A DNA stretch of 64,000 nt from Ophelia neglecta. Lineage: Eukaryota. The DNA lies in assembly GCA_965285935.1 (NCBI GenBank), contig OZ260667.1, positions 44,330,001 to 44,394,000 of the forward strand. The letters are read 5' to 3'. The position numbers and the translations under genes are program-made. Below, in pieces: positions 38,171-46,279 of this stretch; position 1 is the first letter of the stretch, and every line of letters begins with the position of its first letter. The notes below the pieces were generated by a model that saw nothing but the letters and a program-made list of their open reading frames with translations, did no database searches and was not told the origin of the DNA.

Positions 38171-39346
38171 ATGACTAGCCAGGTAAGAGAGTCGTTACTG
38201 CCCAGCCTTCCTTCGTGGGTATGGTGTGCATTGCTCATACTGATTTTCATCGGCCTGATTGTCCGTGTCTATGACTCATTAGACGAAGTGGAAGAAAAGC
38301 CAACAATTTTTTGCAAGAAGAGCCCCTTCACCAGATTTATCATTCAAAAGTGCCAGATGATGAACCAGCCTTTTTTTCCTCCCTTGCTAGTCAGGAATCG
38401 ACATATACAGACCTTGCTATCGGTTATCTTCTCAAGGGCCGATGTTTCCTTCAACCGAGAGTTCCTTCGCGTTCCCGACCAAGGACTGATTGCTCTGGAC
38501 TGGGGGATCAACGAGAAGCAGGCCCTGTGTAAGACGGGGACCGTCTTGATCATAATCCCGAGCCTGACCGGCGACGCGCAGCAGGTGAGCTTTCTCTGTC
38601 AACAGGCCATGAAACAGGGCTTCCGTCCAGTGGTCTTCAATCGTCGAGGACACGGTGGCACTCCACTCCTTAGTCCCAAACTCCAAAGCTTCAGTGAATC
38701 GCAAGACGTGCGACACGTCATCAAGTACATCCGAGGCCGATTTCCCTGTACCAAAATAGTGGCAGTTGGGATCAGTTTAGGCACCTCAGTTCTCATGTCT
38801 TATTTAGGTGAATACGGCTCCTCCTCACGTATACAGTCGGCAGTGTGTATTTCCCCGGTGTTTGATCCCCGGTCGGTCCTCACAACCACACTGCCACCCC
38901 TGTACCAGTCCCTCGGCACGTATTACATGAAGAAGACAATTTGCTCACACCCATTGGTACTGTCAAATGTCATGGACTTGGACGCAGTATTGCAGAGCAG
39001 GTCCTTGTTTGAACTTGAGTGCATTGTACAAAAGATTCAAGACGGAAAGCAAGATCGTGAAGAATACTGGGAAGCAAACAACCCCATAAAGGCTGTTGAT
39101 GAAGTTGTAGCGCCTGTTTTATTCGTCATCAGTGAAGATGACCCCCTTGTTCCTTGGAACACAGTTCCAAGGGAGTTATTTGATACATTTATAAATTTCA
39201 TGTTGGTGCGGACTAAAAGAGGTGGCCATGCTGGATTTTTGGGGGACACTAATCTGGAGCCTTGGGCTGATAAACTGAGTATTGACTATCTGACAGCTAC
39301 ATTTGAATTCCTAAAAAGAGTAAACAAACAAGAGCCCCAACTTTAA
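38171..39346 (+). CDS. ABHD15: Alpha/beta hydrolase ABHD15 orthologue, single coding exon, N-terminal TM anchor
   Basis: 391 aa with HIQTLL, ALDW, VVFNRRGHGG, SYLGEYGSSS...AVCISP (recalled ABHD15 signature SYLGECGSSS...AACISP), VDEV..PVL..SEDDP and GGHAGF. The acceptor tttcag| 8 nt before the ATG implies an upstream UTR exon. Confidence 0.88.
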   Translation: MTSQVRESLLPSLPSWVWCALLILIFIGLIVRVYDSLDEVEEKPTIFCKKSPFTRFIIQKCQMMNQPFFPPLLVRNRHIQTLLSVIFSRADVSFNREFLRVPDQGLIALDWGINEKQALCKTGTVLIIIPSLTGDAQQVSFLCQQAMKQGFRPVVFNRRGHGGTPLLSPKLQSFSESQDVRHVIKYIRGRFPCTKIVAVGISLGTSVLMSYLGEYGSSSRIQSAVCISPVFDPRSVLTTTLPPLYQSLGTYYMKKTICSHPLVLSNVMDLDAVLQSRSLFELECIVQKIQDGKQDREEYWEANNPIKAVDEVVAPVLFVISEDDPLVPWNTVPRELFDTFINFMLVRTKRGGHAGFLGDTNLEPWADKLSIDYLTATFEFLKRVNKQEPQL

Positions 39347-40108
39347 GTAAACACAACAATACGAAATAGTTCGAAAACTACATATACCTAGTATTTATTT
39401 TACATGTCCCTTGATATTATTGTAATGGAAAAATGTGACTTACTGTCATACAATTATAAATCCGTATTAAAACACATGTGAGCAAGTCAACCGAGGAATG
39501 CCAATAAGAGAGAAATAATAAGCAGTGGTATTGTAATATGTACTATGTATAAAAAGATATATATATATATATATATCTAATTATATAAATGTAATATGTC
39601 ACTGGAAAAATAAACATGTATTAGCATTATCCTTATAAATAGTGTCATCATCGTTAGCTTACATCGTGAAAGGAATAATTTGATTTTTGCCAAATTACGT
39701 GACTCAACATTTGCACTTTCGCTAACTCCTAATGATGAAATCCGTATTATATGATTTAACTCCAATGACATTATGTGCACTAATTGGCACTGGGTACCCA
39801 AACCCAAGTTATGACATTTCTCAATTGTTTTTCAGTTATCATTATGGTTAGTGCGAATTGTACGAAACAAATAAAATCTGATACAGTGATATTGTTCAGA
39901 GAAATTCTGAAACACAATAAACTGTAACACTGTGACTTTAACTGAGAATCTTATCATTAGTGGACAAAATAAATTTCCTGCATGACCGACTAAAGGGTAC
40001 GAAAGACTAAGTTTCAACAATTTAACGGTAGAATTTATGCATAAATGAGGTAATGAAAGAAAAACAAGCCCTTGACTAGTGATCATTAACGTTATCGTGT
40101 ATTTCATC

Positions 40109-41989
40109 TCAGCTTTGATGTTTTTCATTAGAGACATCCGCCACACCGCTGGTTAAAACTCCCATAACAGCGTCAGTCAGAGCCTGACGATCGAAAGGTG
40201 TCTCGGCGGAAATGTCTTTGACGCTTTTATCGTCCGAAGGAACGACGTGCCCACCTGTAGCTGGTTCTTGGGCGCTAGTCTCGGGCCCCATTGCTTCACC
40301 AGGCTCGCTCTCGGCAGTTGATTCTTCTTCTATATGTTCCCTGATTGCAGAAGCAACCCCGTCGGCTAGTACGCTCAAAACCGTATCAGACAATGCTGCT
40401 TTCCCTTCACTTTCCTCCATATATGTTCTCAATTGTGCAACACCCATGGGAGTTTCCTCGGGCACTGATGGTTCCTCGATCATTGAAGGTTCTTCGACGC
40501 TTTCTTTTATAATTGCTTCGCTAACTCTTTCGGAGATGGTTTCGGCAAGAACATTCAACACAGACTCTGCCATGTTATCTTGATCTGGCAAGACTGTGTC
40601 TTCTGGTTTTGGTTTCTCAGTCATATAGTTTTCTTGTTGCTCGTCTACCATTTCCTGCAACATTTCCTCGTTTTCTCTCCCATCTATATCCGTTACTTTC
40701 TCAATGAGAGATGACGCCACCTCCTCGGCTAAAATGCCCAGAACAGCTTCGGCCAGGGTAGTTTGTCCATCTTCTGTAGGAACAGCGGAAAGTGCATCTG
40801 AAATCGTTGCTTCCTCGGGACAGGATTGAATCCTTACCATTGGAGGCCCTTCAACCATCGCAGGTTCGACGATCATTGTTTCGTTGTCAGAAAGTTGCGA
40901 CCCGGCAATCATCGGCTGAACTGTGTCCCTATCTTCCTCCACTAACTCCTCCGCTTCCTCTGCAATAGCCGAAGCAATTCCCTCAGCAAGTACACCTAAG
41001 ACAGCTTCGGCCAGGATAGTTTGCTGATTCTCGCTGGCCGAAGAGGGGTTTTCCCCTGAAGATACCCCTATCGGTTGCTCTTCCACAAAAGGCTTCGTGG
41101 CTTCTACTAATCCGGGTAGCTCTTCTACCTTCTCCAGCTCTGCTGGCTTTTCGACGACAGATGCTGTTACGCCTTCGGCAATAATTCCAAGCACTGTCTC
41201 TGCAAGAGCAGTACGCTCGCTTTCGAATTCAACAGGCTGAGCCTCTTCTTCTACCCTTGTTGATTCCTCCTTCAATTGTCCTGCAATTATCGGTTGTTTT
41301 ATTGTAGACATATCATCTTCTTCTTCAAGTCTTTCTTCAATGGCCGAGGCAACCCCATCCTTCAAAACATCAAGGATAGCTTCAGCAAGTGCTTCCTTGT
41401 GCTCATCTGTGGGTTCTAATTGCCATGCTTCGTTCTGTTCTACTTGCTCTTCAACCGTGGTCGGTATTTTAACTTTTTCCACTGAGGGTTCGGACTCTTC
41501 ATTGAGAGTTGCCTTTTCTAAGAGACTTTCAGTGACGCCATCAGCTATCGCAGTTAAGATCTGTTCAGCCAACGCAGTTTGTGCCTCCTCTGCACTTGGT
41601 GGATCCTGCAATAGAGACTCATGTTCGAAAGCGGCATTTAAGTGACCTTGGTGTGGACTTGTGCTAGAATTCTGTAAGCCGTCTTCTTCCGCCGCTATTT
41701 TTTCCTGGAGAGCTTCACTCACTCCTTCAGTAAGTATGGCCAACACGGCTTCAGCAAGCGGGCCCTGCGCTGGTTCCTGACATTCTTCACTTGGTTCATC
41801 AGAGGCATTTTTCGCTTCCGGAGTTGCTATTTGTTTGTGCGGTGTGGCATACCGCGGATAGTTGGTCTCGCTTGTGATGACTGCCGATGTGTAAGGAGTG
41901 ACTGGGTACATTTCACAGCAGTCGCCGTATTGTTGGCCTCTGGAAGTGGTGAAGATGTGGTGATGGTTGTCCGGTTGGAACTCAAGGGC
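40109..41989 (-). CDS. K2P channel terminal exon: 626-aa acidic tail with nine helical repeats
   Basis: Acceptor aatttccag|GCC at 41989 is in phase 0 and in frame with ORF 40109-41911. It lies 156 nt from the phase-0 donor of exon 4. Confidence 0.8.
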   Translation of the reverse strand, partial: ALEFQPDNHHHIFTTSRGQQYGDCCEMYPVTPYTSAVITSETNYPRYATPHKQIATPEAKNASDEPSEECQEPAQGPLAEAVLAILTEGVSEALQEKIAAEEDGLQNSSTSPHQGHLNAAFEHESLLQDPPSAEEAQTALAEQILTAIADGVTESLLEKATLNEESEPSVEKVKIPTTVEEQVEQNEAWQLEPTDEHKEALAEAILDVLKDGVASAIEERLEEEDDMSTIKQPIIAGQLKEESTRVEEEAQPVEFESERTALAETVLGIIAEGVTASVVEKPAELEKVEELPGLVEATKPFVEEQPIGVSSGENPSSASENQQTILAEAVLGVLAEGIASAIAEEAEELVEEDRDTVQPMIAGSQLSDNETMIVEPAMVEGPPMVRIQSCPEEATISDALSAVPTEDGQTTLAEAVLGILAEEVASSLIEKVTDIDGRENEEMLQEMVDEQQENYMTEKPKPEDTVLPDQDNMAESVLNVLAETISERVSEAIIKESVEEPSMIEEPSVPEETPMGVAQLRTYMEESEGKAALSDTVLSVLADGVASAIREHIEEESTAESEPGEAMGPETSAQEPATGGHVVPSDDKSVKDISAETPFDRQALTDAVMGVLTSGVADVSNEKHQS

Positions 41990-42145: not shown

Positions 42146-42324
42146 CTGAACATTTCCGTTTTCCTCTTTCCATTTTAGTTTCCGCTCTTTAACTTTCTTT
42201 TCCTTTGTGACGACGGCGTCAATGACGAGATTGACGCCAACGGACAGCCACATCAGAGCGATCAGGATCCAGAATGCTAACACTATCCTGTACCACTTCC
42301 GGTTTCCCTCACTTGCCATCTTTC
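42146..42324 (-). CDS. K2P channel exon 4 (M4 and basic proximal C-terminus)
   Basis: WYRIVLAFWILIALMWLSVGVNLV...KEKKVKERKLK; tttacag| and CAG|gtatat. Confidence 0.9.
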
Positions 42325-42600: not shown

Positions 42601-42921
42601 CTGGGACCTCTCCGAGCCCGACCGTGGTGACCGAGAAGAAGCTAAACCACCAGGCATCGGCGAAAGATCTATTCTCCACCCGATAATACATCAAAGATGG
42701 CAGAGTGATGATAAAACCCAGTCCCAACACTATAATCATCAGTCCCTTGAGACAGATACAGGTACAAGACGTCCGAGAGCAGCCTCCCGTCCTCTCCCCG
42801 AGCCGTGCCAGTCTGCGGCCTACCCCTGATATCACAATCAATGTCAGGGGGATGCCGATCAGGGCGTAGAACACGGCGAACACTCTCCCGGCTTGGGTCA
42901 GAGGCTCAGCATTACCGTACC
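42601..42921 (-). CDS. K2P channel exon 3 (GYG filter, M2, M3, pore 2)
   Basis: GYGNAEPLTQAGRVFAVFYALIGIPL...SFADAWWFSFFSVTTVGLGEVP; canonical splice sites, phase 1 at both ends. Confidence 0.95.
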
Positions 42922-43247: not shown

Positions 43248-43409
43248 CTATTGTTGTTACCAAATTGGTAGCAAAGAAGAATGAGCTGGCAAAGTCCCAG
43301 TTGGGCGCTATCGTCTGGTTGGAAGGTACCATCACTCCCTTGGTGTAGTCCTCTATCAGGCGGTCGACTAGATGCCAAAATTCCTTCTCGGTTACACACG
43401 GATAATTGT
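43248..43409 (-). CDS. K2P channel exon 2 (cap Cys, pore helix 1)
   Basis: NYPCVTEKEFWHLV...NWDFASSFFFATNLVTTIG; tttcag| and G|gtaaat. Confidence 0.93.
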
Positions 43410-44079
43410 CTGAAAGTGTTGGAAAATCCACTGTATCATAAACTCAATATAAACTGGATTATCATATAAATCCCAAACTGCTGAAAACTGATGTTTACAA
43501 ACATAGAACTTATTCCTGTATTCGATAATTCTTTTTAATTCGAGTTGCATAGCAGCCGATATTCATAAAGTTAACAACTATCGACATGGGCACAAAAGAT
43601 TTCTTCTGCTACATACACTAATCTTTTTTTATATGAGTTCGGCAGCTTGTTTTGCAGCAAGTTTTACCGAGTACGAAGTGACATTGTTAAAAAATTGGTA
43701 TTTCATATACTCAATTGATTTTCAACTATACAGAACTAAAATTAATCATGTTGGATCATGTTTCTACTTTATATGCCATACCTAATGACATTTGATCTGC
43801 TGGTCTGACATTTCTAGATATTTAATTTGCTTTAAAAGAAAAAGGCAGGCTTAGACACCCCTCCCTTTAATTTTACATTGTAACGTTAGTGTTATGGCTC
43901 GCCGTTTTTCTAGACTTTTCTAGGGGGGGGGGGGGGGGGGGGGGCGGGGGTAGGAGAGAAGTTACTTATATATGTAATAGCCGGGATTTCGAGAATTTTG
44001 TTAGTCATAGCTCAGAGGTAAACTAACACTGTAATTTACCAGGTTCGTTAATTAGTAATTATTTAATTATTAGACTTAC

Positions 44080-44214
44080 TGAGCCAGTCTCTGTTCTTGT
44101 GCAGATGCAGTGCCCTGTTTGTGTCTTCATTGTCTCTTTCCACGAAATGAAAAATAACACCACCAACAATGTGATGATCAGCAGTGGTATCAGAACTTTC
44201 CAGTTCAGAATCAT
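44080..44214 (-). CDS. K2P channel exon 1 (M1 and cap helix); contains an apparent 1-bp deletion
   Basis: MILNWKVLIPLLII in one frame, then IVGGVIFHFVERDNEDTNRALHLHKNRDWL in the -1 frame. The donor A|gtaagt is phase 1 only in the second frame. Confidence 0.8.
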
Positions 44215-45016: not shown

Positions 45017-45153
45017 TCAATAAAGTTCAGGAAATCTCTTCATATGCTCTTGTTTGTCAATAATAGACTGCTTGCGACAGTCTTTGGCGGACTCAAATGT
45101 GGGGTGTATACTTAGGCATTTCTCCATATCTTTTATTGCCATGTCAAATCGAG
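45017..45153 (-). CDS. TTC32: TTC32 coding exon 3
   Basis: RFDMAIKDMEKCLSIHPTFESAKDCRKQSIIDKQE...Y stop; acceptor ttttatttcag|, phase consistent. Confidence 0.9.
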
Positions 45154-45341
45154 CTGAAATAAAACATATATTCTTCACTGAGGATAACAAAATTAGCACA
45201 ATAAATTCATAGAACACATAGATGTTCAAAAGACCAAGAATAGAAACAAAATAATCACGCTGCCACCTAAGGTATGGTAACTTAATGAGTTTTCTGATTA
45301 TTTTGCTTGGTAAAGAACTTGGAAAGCTGTCTGTTTCTTAC

Positions 45342-45499
45342 CTAATCTATAATGAATGAGGCCCCTGTTGTAATAGGCTACTGCCATGTCAGGGCACAAT
45401 GATATGGCTGTGGTGAAATCCTCTACAGCCTCCGTAAAGGCAACTTGTAAATACTGCACCTGGCCTCTCTCATTGTACATCTCAGCCTGCCTCTTTCTT
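45342..45499 (-). CDS. TTC32: TTC32 coding exon 2 (TPR motifs)
   Basis: AEMYNERGQVQYLQVAFTEAVEDFTTAI...AYYNRGLIHYRL closely resembles recalled TTC32 (AYNNRGQIKY...YYNRGLILYRLG). Confidence 0.92.
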
Positions 45500-46130
45500 C
45501 TAAGAAATTCATAAAAAAGATTATTGAAATAATTCAAATACACCTAAGAATCAAAAATCGTTATTCTCAAGTATTGTATAAATATTCCTTTCCGTTTTTT
45601 TATTTAATGACTTTCAGTACAGGATATGTTATTAGCAGTTTAATTTTGATACTAACATGACATGATCAGCATGTGACAACCAAGTCATTGCTGATTATAT
45701 TCTTTGTGGAAAAATCATTTGTGTTAATAGAGGGGTATTAATCAGAGTACGCTCCTCTGGAAGCCCCACTACTATAGTCAGCATTCCTTATAATTGTTCA
45801 AAACAACCTTACAAAATGAAAAAAAATGATATATGGTATAAACAGAGATTATCTAGAAATATCATTTAGCCCTGATAATACAGCTAACATGTATGCGACA
45901 GGAAAAGCCCACAATTTCAGATTCAGCCATAAATTAGCATAGGTAATTTAATGTTTAGAGATTGGCCTTTACCGTCAAATGACCTTAAATAGGAACCTTT
46001 CCTTAAAGTTTAATGATTGCCTTGGAAATGTTCGCAAATTTTTGGCCAGCTGCAAAAATTTGAACGTTTTTAGCAGGCGAGCATTTTTTGCGTTGATTAG
46101 AGTAAAACCAGAGTATGGTTAGTCCCTTAC

Positions 46131-46279
46131 ATTTTAGGCCTGTCTACATCATTGAGACTGCTGTCCAGTGTTTGCTGGAGTATAGTGATAACCTGATCAT
46201 ATTTTGATTCAGAGTCTTTGTGCAAGCCAGCAGATTTCAAACGTTCTGCTTCCCTCTGTATGTCTTCCACTGCATCCAT
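46131..46279 (-). CDS. TTC32: TTC32 coding exon 1
   Basis: ttttttaattag|ccttcaccATGG, MDAVEDIQREAERLKSAGLHKDSESKYDQVI..., donor AT|gtaagg in phase 2 matching the next exon. Confidence 0.85.

What the first reader, a model, noticed from the sequence alone, without database searches (positions are those of the whole stretch)
40121..41758. K2P channel tail with nine regularly spaced amphipathic helices, a possible built-in multivalent scaffold
Seen: nine copies of roughly LAEAVLG(I/V)LAEGVASAIxE (LAEAVLAILTEGVSEAL, LAEQILTAIADGVTESL, LAEAILDVLKDGVASAI, LAETVLGIIAEGVTASV, LAEAVLGVLAEGIASAI, LAEAVLGILAEEVASSL, MAESVLNVLAETISERV, LSDTVLSVLADGVASAI, LTDAVMGVLTSGVADVS). They recur about every 60 aa, separated by diverged Glu/Pro-rich linkers, so selection acts on the helices. 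Known: the AxxVLxxLAxxV spacing fits the AKAP PKA-regulatory-subunit (D/D domain) binding consensus and resembles vinculin-binding helices; mammalian TREK channels recruit a separate AKAP150. Inference: a channel-scaffold fusion I do not recognise from characterised KCNK proteins.
Basis: partly seen in the sequence, partly recalled or inferred. Interest (0 to 1): 0.75.

Follow-up and report, generated by a model that had tools for sequence, protein, structure and literature searches.

The report
Potassium channel with nine-helix acidic tail
An invertebrate-type leak potassium channel gene ends in a very long, acidic, floppy tail carrying nine copies of one short helix kept by selection, most likely repeated docking sites for a still unknown partner protein.

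Summary
A five-exon K2P channel gene lies on the minus strand (44214-40109). Its last exon (41989-40109) joins exon 4 through a canonical, in-frame GT/AG intron and encodes 626 residues with net charge about -106. It holds nine copies of a 20-23-residue motif, mostly 60-64 residues apart.

Each copy is recovered by a profile built from the other eight (13-36 bits, against at most 6.2 in 1000 shuffles). Codons at identical residues match no more often than codon usage predicts (124 of 360, 118 expected), and linkers are unalignable. So the duplications are old and selection kept only the helix. AlphaFold gives helix plus disorder.

No relative of the tail was found in any database or elsewhere in this genome. 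The databases hold no close kin of this animal, so that blank is weak.

The motif fits the hydrophobic register of AKAP helices in 62 of 72 cells, but any amphipathic helix shows that register. The vinculin-binding consensus is not met. No RNA data exist. The partner is unknown.

My verdict is a lineage-specific multivalent helical-motif tail. PKA docking is a minority possibility. In passing: the reference lacks 13 bases in exon 1 that read contigs carry.

The parts
44080..44214 (-). K2P exon 1: start codon, M1 helix, start of the cap. The frame is broken in the reference window, which lacks 13 bases that the contigs of two runs carry behind 44164.
   Evidence: An ATG-led hydrophobic ORF is seen. 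The M1-end motif lies in the other frame from 44164 on. The 13-letter insertion appears in X1 and X2 (table 4). The donor GT is at 44079-44078. With the 13 bases the five exons sum to 2688 nt, or 896 codons.
43248..43409 (-). K2P exon 2: cap helix with the apex cysteine, and the pore helix 1 up to T-I-G.
   Evidence: It aligns to residues 66-117 of solved TWIK-1 at E 1.2e-5. Pfam Ion_trans_2 gives 0.0027. Splice sites were read.
42601..42921 (-). K2P exon 3: the G-Y-G filter 1, M2, M3, pore helix 2 and the G-L-G filter 2.
   Evidence: Pfam Ion_trans_2 matches at 3.2e-16 in two stretches. There are 43 hits to solved K2P/K-channel structures, the best 5.5e-12. Seven SNPs fall here, 6 of them synonymous.
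42146..42324 (-). K2P exon 4: M4 and a basic post-M4 stretch. The donor GT is at 42145-42144. Reading through the donor meets a stop after 8 codons, so a short-tail isoform is possible.
40109..41989 (-). Exon 5: the 626-codon acidic tail plus the stop codon (40111-40109).
   Evidence: The AG acceptor is at 41991-41990 and the frame continues from exon 4. It holds 139 D+E against 33 K+R. Contigs of three runs show no indels. It is unique in its own genome.
41708..41758 (-). Helix motif copy 1
   Evidence: 36.3 bits when left out; inside predicted helix 79-101.
41522..41572 (-). Helix motif copy 2
   Evidence: 25.5 bits; helix 133-162.
41339..41389 (-). Helix motif copy 3
   Evidence: 29.1 bits; helix 195-222. 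In one search the helix has pLDDT 92-93 when the nine-unit alignment is used.
41156..41206 (-). Helix motif copy 4
   Evidence: 36.5 bits; helix 258-280.
40964..41014 (-). Helix motif copy 5
   Evidence: 36.1 bits; helix 320-351; 8 of 8 register positions aliphatic.
40706..40756 (-). Helix motif copy 6
   Evidence: 32.7 bits; helix 406-433; 8 of 8.
40523..40573 (-). Helix motif copy 7 (degenerate)
   Evidence: 13.3 bits; helix 470-498.
40343..40393 (-). Helix motif copy 8
   Evidence: 32.2 bits; helix 527-556.
40130..40180 (-). Helix motif copy 9 (degenerate, six residues before the stop)
   Evidence: 15.9 bits; helix 601-621; 5 of 8.
39394..39399 (-). The only AATAAA in the 762 nt between the tail's stop and the convergent neighbouring gene. 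It is a possible poly(A) signal, 709 nt after the stop.
   Evidence: This is a pattern match only.

Best explanation
This is a divergent, invertebrate-type two-pore-domain (K2P) potassium channel. Its last exon adds a 626-residue cytoplasmic tail that is strongly polyanionic and mostly disordered.

An old internal repeat of about 61 residues has decayed everywhere except in a 20-23-residue amphipathic helix. The helix has the form basic/Gln-x-Ala, then a Leu-Ala-Glu start, aliphatic pairs every 3-4 residues, a conserved Gly at position 12, and an invariant Glu at position 19 usually followed by a basic residue (6 of 9). Nine copies survive.

I read them as nine equivalent fold-upon-binding docking helices on a flexible tether, which gives 18 per dimeric channel. 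Each would place its aliphatic face in a hydrophobic groove of one kind of partner, so the channel is anchored or clustered with high avidity, or concentrates many copies of that partner at its mouth.

Shown here: the gene structure, the repeats, selection confined to the helix, and helix-plus-disorder predictions.

Inferred: translation as one protein with the channel, binding, and the identity of the partner. The most specific candidate is a dimerisation/docking (RIIa-fold) domain such as that of PKA regulatory subunits. I put that sub-case at about 0.2.
For: - Gene structure. There are canonical in-frame junctions. The exons carry K2P signatures. The 626 codons are open at P about 1.6e-15.
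- Repeats. All nine copies pass the leave-one-out test. The profile built from them, so a circular match, scores each copy at 40-45 bits, E 1.6e-8 to 3.4e-7, in a six-frame search of the 762-Mb genome.
- Selection on the helix only. Of 360 sites with identical residues between copies, 124 share the codon, against 118 expected from codon usage. Third-position identity is 0.32. Linkers do not align.
- Structure. The single-sequence AlphaFold model has mean pLDDT 38.7 and pTM 0.22, yet 9 of 9 motifs lie inside predicted helices. With the nine units as the alignment, the motif is a helix at pLDDT 92-93 and the linker sits at 51-56.
- Helix face. Aliphatic residues fill the register 2, 5, 6, 9, 10, 13, 14, 17 in 62 of 72 cells. 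Acidic residues fill columns 3 (9 of 9), 11 (8 of 9) and 19 (9 of 9).
- Candidate partners exist. Five exons over the Pfam RIIa cut-off are in the same genome.
- Precedent. AKAPs arose many times independently, and two of them hold more than one PKA site (passages of PMC12083921). Paxillin LD motifs are acidic-flanked amphipathic helices used as repeated docking sites (passage of PMC5316197).
Against: - No RNA evidence exists that exon 5 is spliced to the channel, or expressed at all. The three holder runs are genomic DNA contigs from one sample.
- No orthologue could be examined, so conservation between species is unknown.
- Within the sample the tail carries 11 nonsynonymous and 4 synonymous differences (pN/pS about 0.8), against 1 and 8 in channel exons 1-3 (Fisher p 0.009). 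Four of the 11 fall inside motif cores. Two of those four are residues seen in other copies, and two lie in the degenerate last copy.
- The hydrophobic face is wide, because columns 1 and 8 are also aliphatic. That would equally suit self-association.
- The conserved Gly at position 12 is unexplained.
- Against PKA docking in particular: no [RK][RK]x[ST] site in the tail or in exons 3-4; nine sites far exceed the AKAPs with more than one PKA site named in the passages read (AKAP220 with two helices, SKIP with tandem helices); the profile finds no AKAP peptide among solved structures.
Confidence: 0.55

Rival explanations
1. Built-in multivalent AKAP. Each helix docks the D/D domain dimer of a PKA regulatory subunit (or another RIIa/Dpy-30-fold protein), so one channel dimer carries up to 18 kinase holoenzymes. 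This is a sub-case of the best explanation.
For: - The register 2, 5, 6, 9, 10, 13, 14, 17 is aliphatic in 62 of 72 cells, and two copies meet it 8 of 8, against a mean of 0.118 such windows per shuffled tail (register from passages of PMC12083921).
- Side chains are small aliphatics with no aromatics. The aromatic first residue of the RI-type 'FA motif' is absent (Leu/Met at column 1), which would point to RII-type or unspecialised docking.
- Five RIIa-domain exons lie in the genome.
- AKAP helices evolved repeatedly.
- Mammalian TREK-1 is regulated through a separate AKAP.
Against: - The register is generic for amphipathic helices.
- No basophilic PKA site was found in the cytoplasmic parts scanned.
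- There is no precedent for nine sites.
- The conserved Gly 12 and the invariant Glu 19 are not features named in the passages read.
- No sequence hit to any solved AKAP peptide.
- Binding was not testable here.
Confidence: 0.2
2. Self-association or intramolecular docking. The helices pair with each other, within a tail, between the two tails of a dimer or between channels. Alternatively the acidic helices dock on the basic post-M4 stretch. The outcome would be channel clustering or autoregulation with no outside partner.
For: - The hydrophobic face is wide: columns 1, 5, 6, 8, 9, 13 and 17 are all aliphatic.
- Mean hydrophobicity is high (0.16-0.62) with a modest hydrophobic moment (0.19-0.42).
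- Small residues (Ala, Gly, Ser) on the other face allow tight helix packing.
- The motif occurs in no other gene of this genome (9 matches, all in this exon, from 10 candidates). That is expected if the helices bind each other.
- A basic cluster lies right after M4.
Against: - AlphaFold packs nothing with confidence (pTM 0.22, pLDDT 38.7).
- Net charge of about -106 opposes compaction.
- Linkers of about 40 proline-rich residues argue against a folded bundle.
Confidence: 0.12
3. Docking onto helical-bundle cytoskeletal adaptors, in the manner of paxillin LD motifs or talin/TarP vinculin-binding sites. This would tie the channel to adhesion or cortical actin structures.
For: - The architecture resembles paxillin: short acidic-flanked amphipathic helices separated by disordered linkers (passage of PMC5316197).
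- Vinculin-binding sites are single amphipathic helices that embed in a bundle (passages of PMC6001692 and PMC10990152).
- The motif's wide hydrophobic face suits deep burial.
Against: - The vinculin-binding consensus is not met. In the motif's register there are 1-3 identities and 4-6 aliphatic matches of 9. The conserved Gly sits where the consensus has Val, and the best offsets are inconsistent.
- The column that would carry the first Leu of an LD motif (consensus recalled, not from a call) is Ala, Ser or Thr in 9 of 9 copies.
Confidence: 0.08
4. The tail has no specific docking role. It is a fast-evolving polyanionic spacer or cation sink, and the helices persist for a physical reason such as tail dimensions or solubility. 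Or the exon is not part of the channel protein at all: a separate or unexpressed ORF, or a gene that is dying in this lineage.
For: - pN/pS is about 0.8 in the tail.
- There is no RNA evidence.
- The reference copy has a frame-breaking 13-base gap in exon 1.
- An in-frame ATG at 41911 could start a stand-alone 600-residue ORF.
- No homologue was found anywhere.
Against: - Residue identity at the motif persists despite saturated synonymous sites, which requires long-term selection in this frame.
- The open frame reaches back to within 5 codons of a canonical acceptor that is in phase with exon 4.
- The 13 bases are present in the contigs of both runs that cover the site, and the nearby SNP at 44150 is synonymous in the restored frame.
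- Channel exons show 8 synonymous to 1 nonsynonymous difference, so the gene is under constraint.
Confidence: 0.15

Closest known systems
K2P (KCNK) two-pore-domain potassium channels, for example TREK-1 with its regulatory C-terminal tail and separate AKAP150 partner
   Same: The core matches: filter 1 G-Y-G, filter 2 G-L-G, a cap with an apex cysteine, M1-M4 and a cytoplasmic C-terminus with a basic post-M4 stretch (signature as given in PMC6470294).
   Different: - Exon 3 matches all solved subfamilies about equally (5.5e-12 to about 1e-9).
- The best paralogue in its own genome is 38% identical in that exon.
- It is therefore not an orthologue of a named mammalian KCNK.
- 626 of 896 residues are tail, and the tail holds a ninefold helix repeat that matches nothing found.
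A-kinase anchoring protein (AKAP) helices, including the multi-site AKAPs SKIP and AKAP220
   Same: - A 14-18-residue amphipathic helix with aliphatic residues at 2, 5, 6, 9, 10, 13, 14 and 17, set in a disordered region of a protein that supplies the targeting.
- AKAP helices arose independently many times.
   Different: - Nine sites, against the few AKAPs with more than one PKA site in the passages read (AKAP220 with two helices, SKIP with tandem helices).
- Gly at 12 and Glu at 3, 11 and 19 are conserved.
- Extra aliphatics sit at columns 1 and 8.
- The host is an ion channel itself.
- Binding is untested.
Paxillin LD motifs
   Same: Several short amphipathic helices with a hydrophobic patch flanked by acidic residues, separated by disordered linkers, and used as multivalent docking sites (passage of PMC5316197).
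   Different: - The position of the first consensus Leu is Ala, Ser or Thr in all nine copies (the consensus is recalled).
- The helices are longer.
- There is no sequence relationship.
Vinculin-binding sites of talin, TarP and IpaA
   Same: Repeated single amphipathic helices rich in Ala, Val and Leu. TarP carries three in a disordered region (passages of PMC6001692).
   Different: The published 19-residue consensus is not met in any common register.

Membership tests
K2P (two-pore-domain K+ channel) | Two pore domains with G-Y/F-G in P1 and G-L/F-G in P2 | tested here: met
   T-I-G|Y-G spans the exon 2/3 junction and T-V-G-L-G lies in exon 3. Pfam Ion_trans_2 matches at 3.2e-16 in two stretches. 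The signature is as stated in PMC6470294.
K2P (two-pore-domain K+ channel) | Extracellular cap between M1 and P1 with an apex cysteine | tested here: met
   Exon 2 aligns to TWIK-1 residues 66-117, and the cysteine is aligned.
K2P (two-pore-domain K+ channel) | Four transmembrane helices in one intact reading frame | tested here: inconclusive
   M2, M3 and M4 are read in exons 3-4. M1 in exon 1 is split over two frames in the reference, and these join only with the 13 bases carried by contigs of X1 and X2. The exons were never joined for a search.
AKAP (functional class) | A 14-18-residue amphipathic helix with a conserved hydrophobic face at 2, 5, 6, 9, 10, 13, 14, 17 | tested here: met
   62 of 72 cells are A/V/L/I/M/F. 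Per copy the counts are 6, 7, 7, 7, 8, 8, 7, 7 and 5 of 8. All nine are predicted helical. The feature is not specific.
AKAP (functional class) | Direct binding to the D/D domain of a PKA regulatory subunit, displaced by helix-breaking changes | not testable with these tools
   No complex modelling or assay is available. The genome does hold 5 RIIa-domain exons.
AKAP, RI-selective subclass | Aromatic residue then Ala ('FA motif') at helix positions 1-2 | tested here: not met
   Column 1 is Leu in 8 and Met in 1 of 9 copies. No copy has Phe or Tyr there (criterion from PMC12083921).
Vinculin-binding site | The 19-residue consensus quoted in PMC6001692 (L, AA, VA, V, LI, A at positions 1, 4-5, 8-9, 12, 15-16, 19) | tested here: not met
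   In register there are 1-3 identities of 9. The best offsets range from -7 to +5 across copies. Gly sits at position 12.
LD motif (paxillin type) | Leu-Asp start, then leucines at +3, +4 and +7 (consensus recalled, not from a call) | tested here: not met
   When aligned on the acidic column 3, the leading position is Ala in 7, Ser in 1 and Thr in 1 of 9 copies. The later positions are Val/Ile, Leu/Met and Leu/Ile.

The most novel reading that the evidence does not exclude
The channel is its own signalosome. It is a K2P pore fused to a ninefold array (18 per dimer) of D/D-domain docking helices, which concentrates PKA or other RIIa-fold proteins directly at a leak channel. Vertebrates achieve this with a separate AKAP. 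It would be by far the most multivalent natural kinase anchor known, and an independent invention of the AKAP helix inside an ion channel.
Probability: 0.15. Interest if true: 0.75.

Novelty: new variant of a known kind. Interest (0 to 1): 0.45.

Why it matters
K2P channels set resting potential, and in mammals they are tuned through short cytoplasmic tails and separate scaffold proteins. Here 70% of the protein is a tail that selection has reduced to nine identical-purpose helices on disordered spacers.

This is a clean natural example of multivalent short helical motifs fused to a channel. If the partner is found, it would show how an invertebrate lineage solved channel anchoring or local signalling by fusion rather than by adaptor proteins. 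The nine natural variants of one helix form a ready-made specificity series for binding studies.

If no partner exists, it is simply a lineage-specific disordered tail of modest interest.

Tried and rejected
**Homology of the tail.** All of these were blank:
- Pfam.
- The 5.8-billion-protein word search, in which the 8000 best candidates were scored.
- phmmer over 1.84 billion representatives.
- Solved structures, searched with the tail and with the motif profile. The only hits had E 0.14 or worse, to designed repeat proteins, INTS3, KIF20A and PDCD10, which I judge to be chance.
- ESM Atlas, on the whole tail and on residues 190-350.
- Its own genome: the tail finds only itself among 11 candidates, and the motif profile finds only its nine copies among 10 candidates.

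**Control for database coverage.** The intronless neighbour gene (ABHD15-like) finds nothing closer than 41-42% identity. The nearest named hit is a nemertean at 38%. The blanks therefore say little about related species.

**Rejected readings.**
- A recent tandem duplication is rejected, because synonymous sites are saturated and TRF finds no array.
- A vinculin-binding site is rejected.
- A calmodulin-type basic amphipathic helix is rejected on charge. The motif has acidic residues and no conserved basic residue within the helix. This rests on general knowledge.
- A transmembrane or membrane-binding helix is rejected, because each 17 residues hold 2-3 acidic residues and the tail is polyanionic.

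**Literature.** A search for the published AKAP pattern by a letter string found nothing relevant, so I used the register described in PMC12083921. Searches for K2P tails with repeats or intrinsic AKAP function listed nothing of this kind. Only titles and abstracts of those listings were seen. I did not ask for supplements. The AKAP helix alignments in the supplementary figures of PMC12083921 might sharpen the AKAP test.

**Other steps that led nowhere.**
- Earlier findings of the scan gave one unrelated note at 2-530 and none by words.
- Fold searches were not run, because the tail model is low-confidence.
- The third protein search and the listing of cluster members were left unused.
Full report
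**What is there**

The window is animal DNA with small introns. On the minus strand between 44214 and 40109 lies a five-exon gene. I searched and read it exon by exon only. I did not build, search or fold the joined protein.

- **Exon 2 (43409-43248)** aligns to residues 66-117 of solved TWIK-1, including the cap cysteine (E 1.2e-5).
- **Exon 3 (42921-42601)** matches Pfam Ion_trans_2 at 3.2e-16 in two stretches. It matches 43 distinct sequences among solved K2P/K-channel structures, the best at 5.5e-12, with TASK, TWIK, TREK and TRAAK types all within about three orders of magnitude. It carries Y-G of filter 1, M2, M3 and a T-V-G-L-G filter 2. This fits the K2P signature quoted in PMC6470294 (passage).
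- **Exon 4 (42324-42146)** encodes M4 and a basic stretch.
- **Exon 5.** The donor after 42146 is GT and the acceptor before 41989 is AG. A complete codon ends exon 4 and a complete codon starts exon 5. Exon 5 then runs open for 626 codons to the stop at 40111-40109. The open frame reaches only 5 codons upstream of the acceptor (open frame 631).
- **Chance.** An open frame of that length has P about 1.6e-15 from composition, and the other two frames hold 38 and 39 stops.
- **Short isoform.** Reading through the exon 4 donor meets a stop after 8 codons, so a short-tail isoform is conceivable.

**The repeat**

The tail has 139 Asp+Glu and 33 Lys+Arg.

- **Copies and spacing.** Nine copies of one motif start at tail residues 78, 140, 201, 262, 326, 412, 473, 533 and 604, with spacing 62, 61, 61, 64, 86, 61, 60 and 71.
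- **Column profile.**
  - Leu/Met at column 1
  - Ala in 7 of 9 at column 2
  - Glu/Asp in 9 of 9 at column 3
  - Val/Ile in 9 of 9 at column 5
  - Leu/Met in 9 of 9 at column 6
  - Leu/Ile in 9 of 9 at column 9
  - Glu/Asp in 8 of 9 at column 11
  - Gly in 7 of 9 at column 12
  - Val/Ile in 9 of 9 at column 13
  - Glu in 9 of 9 at column 19
  - Lys/Arg in 6 of 9 at column 20
- **Leave-one-out test.** Profiles built from eight copies score the left-out copy at 13.3-36.5 bits. The best score in 1000 shuffled tails is 5.2-6.2 bits.
- **Conservation stops at the helix.** In the alignment of whole units no column beyond about 23 reaches 70%. Linker pairs have a mean z of 0.34 against shuffles. One exception is linkers 3 and 5 (z 5.8), which share a short Gln-Pro-x-Ile-Ala-Gly stretch.

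**Old duplication with selection on the helix**

Between copies there are 360 sites where the residue is identical (excluding Met and Trp), summed over the 36 copy pairs. The codon is identical at 124 of them, against 118 expected from the tail's codon usage alone. Third-position identity is 0.32, and mean nucleotide identity of the 72-nt units is 0.51. TRF finds no long-period array.

So the copies are not recent, and the residue-level identity has been held by purifying selection in this reading frame.

**Structure**

- The single-sequence AlphaFold model of the tail is not a fold (mean pLDDT 38.7, pTM 0.22), but all nine motifs lie inside predicted helices.
- With the nine units as the alignment, the unit model has a helix over residues 2-30. 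pLDDT is 92-93 over the first 20 residues and 51-56 over the linker.
- The helix is amphipathic but rather hydrophobic: mean hydrophobicity 0.16-0.62 and moment 0.19-0.42, against tail means of 0.01 and 0.20.

**Population data**

No RNA run holds the locus. The three holder runs come from one sample and one study. Their contigs cross the introns without joints, so they are genomic DNA.

- **Tail exon.** They show no insertion or deletion in the tail exon, and 15 single-base differences there. Eleven are nonsynonymous and four synonymous, giving pN/pS about 0.8.
- **Motif cores.** Four of the eleven lie in motif cores.
  - Two change to residues that other copies already carry (Ile to Val at column 5, Lys to Thr at column 10).
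  - Two lie in the degenerate ninth copy.
- **Channel exons 1-3.** These show 8 synonymous and 1 nonsynonymous difference. The contrast with the tail gives Fisher p 0.009.
- **Reading.** The channel core is tightly constrained and the tail as a whole is close to neutral now. This tempers the claim of strong selection and fits a disordered tail in which only a few columns matter.

**Exon 1**

The ATG-led hydrophobic frame (44214-44165) and the frame that carries the typical M1 end (from 44164 to the donor at 44080) differ by one base in the reference. The M1-end pattern is recalled.

- Contigs of X1 and X2, the only two runs that cover the site, carry 13 extra letters behind 44164 (table 4).
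- With them the two frames join, the donor phase matches exon 2, and the five exons sum to 2688 nt, or 896 codons. Without them the sum is not a multiple of three.
- The SNP at 44150 is synonymous in the downstream frame.
- I take this as an assembly slip or a null allele in the reference copy, not as evidence that the gene is dead.

**Relatives**

Nothing resembles the tail. The blanks were:
- Pfam.
- The word-indexed 5.8-billion set.
- phmmer over 1.84 billion representatives.
- Solved structures.
- The Atlas.

In its own 762-Mb genome the tail matches only itself, and the motif profile matches only its nine copies. The best K2P paralogue is 38% identical in exon 3, out of 11 matches.

The control matters. 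The neighbouring ABHD15-like gene finds nothing closer than 41-42% identity.

**Comparison with known helices**

- **AKAP helices.** PMC12083921 (passages) describes AKAP helices as 14-18 residues with conservation at 2, 5, 6, 9, 10, 13, 14 and 17.
  - It gives an aromatic-Ala start as the RI determinant.
  - It reports independent origins of AKAPs.
  - It names SKIP and AKAP220 as multi-PKA anchors.
  - Here 62 of 72 register cells are A/V/L/I/M/F, and two copies are 8 of 8, against 0.118 such windows per shuffled tail. Column 1 is never aromatic.
  - The register is that of any amphipathic helix, so this is compatibility and not identification.
  - No [RK][RK]x[ST] site occurs in the tail or in exons 3-4.
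  - Five RIIa-domain exons exist in the genome.
- **Vinculin-binding sites.** The consensus quoted in PMC6001692 (passages) is met at 1-3 of 9 positions in register, with inconsistent best offsets.
- **Paxillin LD motifs.** These are acidic-flanked amphipathic helices used as repeated docking sites (passage of PMC5316197). They are the best architectural analogue, but the leading Leu of their consensus (recalled) is Ala, Ser or Thr here.
- **Talin.** The talin paper (PMC10990152, passages) shows that one aliphatic helix class can serve either vinculin or PKA. This warns against naming a partner from sequence.

**Verdict**

The tail is best read as a lineage-specific array of nine fold-upon-binding helices on an acidic disordered tether fused to a K2P pore (confidence 0.55). 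The partner is unknown.

- PKA/D-D docking: about 0.2.
- Self-association: about 0.12.
- Cytoskeletal bundle docking: about 0.08.
- No specific role, or not part of the channel: about 0.15.

It is a new variant of known kinds (K2P channels and multivalent helical motif arrays). It is moderately interesting and would become more so only if a partner or transcript evidence is found. Literature searches (listings only) showed no description of such a K2P tail.

Noticed in passing
window 44080-44214 (minus), at 44164: The reference lacks 13 bases in K2P exon 1 that contigs of runs X1 and X2 carry. Only with them do the start-codon frame and the M1-end frame join, and the CDS then becomes 896 codons. 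This is an assembly slip or a null allele.
   Followed up: partly
window 43914-43958: There is a long C/G homopolymer run in intron 1 of the K2P gene. Read contigs break there, and run X3 has no depth over 43869-44162.
   Followed up: no
window 38171-39346 (+): This is an intronless 391-residue alpha/beta-hydrolase ORF (Pfam Abhydrolase_1 at 1.3e-14), ABHD15-like, convergent with the K2P 3' end. Its best database relative is only 41-42% identical, and the nearest named hit is a nemertean at 38%.
   Followed up: partly
window 45017-46279 (minus): Exons of a tetratricopeptide-repeat gene lie just upstream of the K2P gene on the same strand (TPR_1 at 3.2e-11 for 45298-45543).
   Followed up: partly
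window 42146-42119 (minus): Retention of the intron after exon 4 would end the protein 8 codons later, giving a possible tail-less isoform of the channel.
   Followed up: no
window 41920-41925 (minus), tail residues 22-23: A Cys-Cys pair sits about 20 residues into the tail exon, before the first helix. It could be a lipidation site. This is seen in the translation only.
   Followed up: no
G000 contigs C1 (98.27-98.30 Mb) and C9 (21.80-21.82 Mb): There are clusters of K2P paralogue exons, three within about 30 kb on C1 and three within about 20 kb on C9. This suggests tandem expansions of the family in this genome.
   Followed up: no
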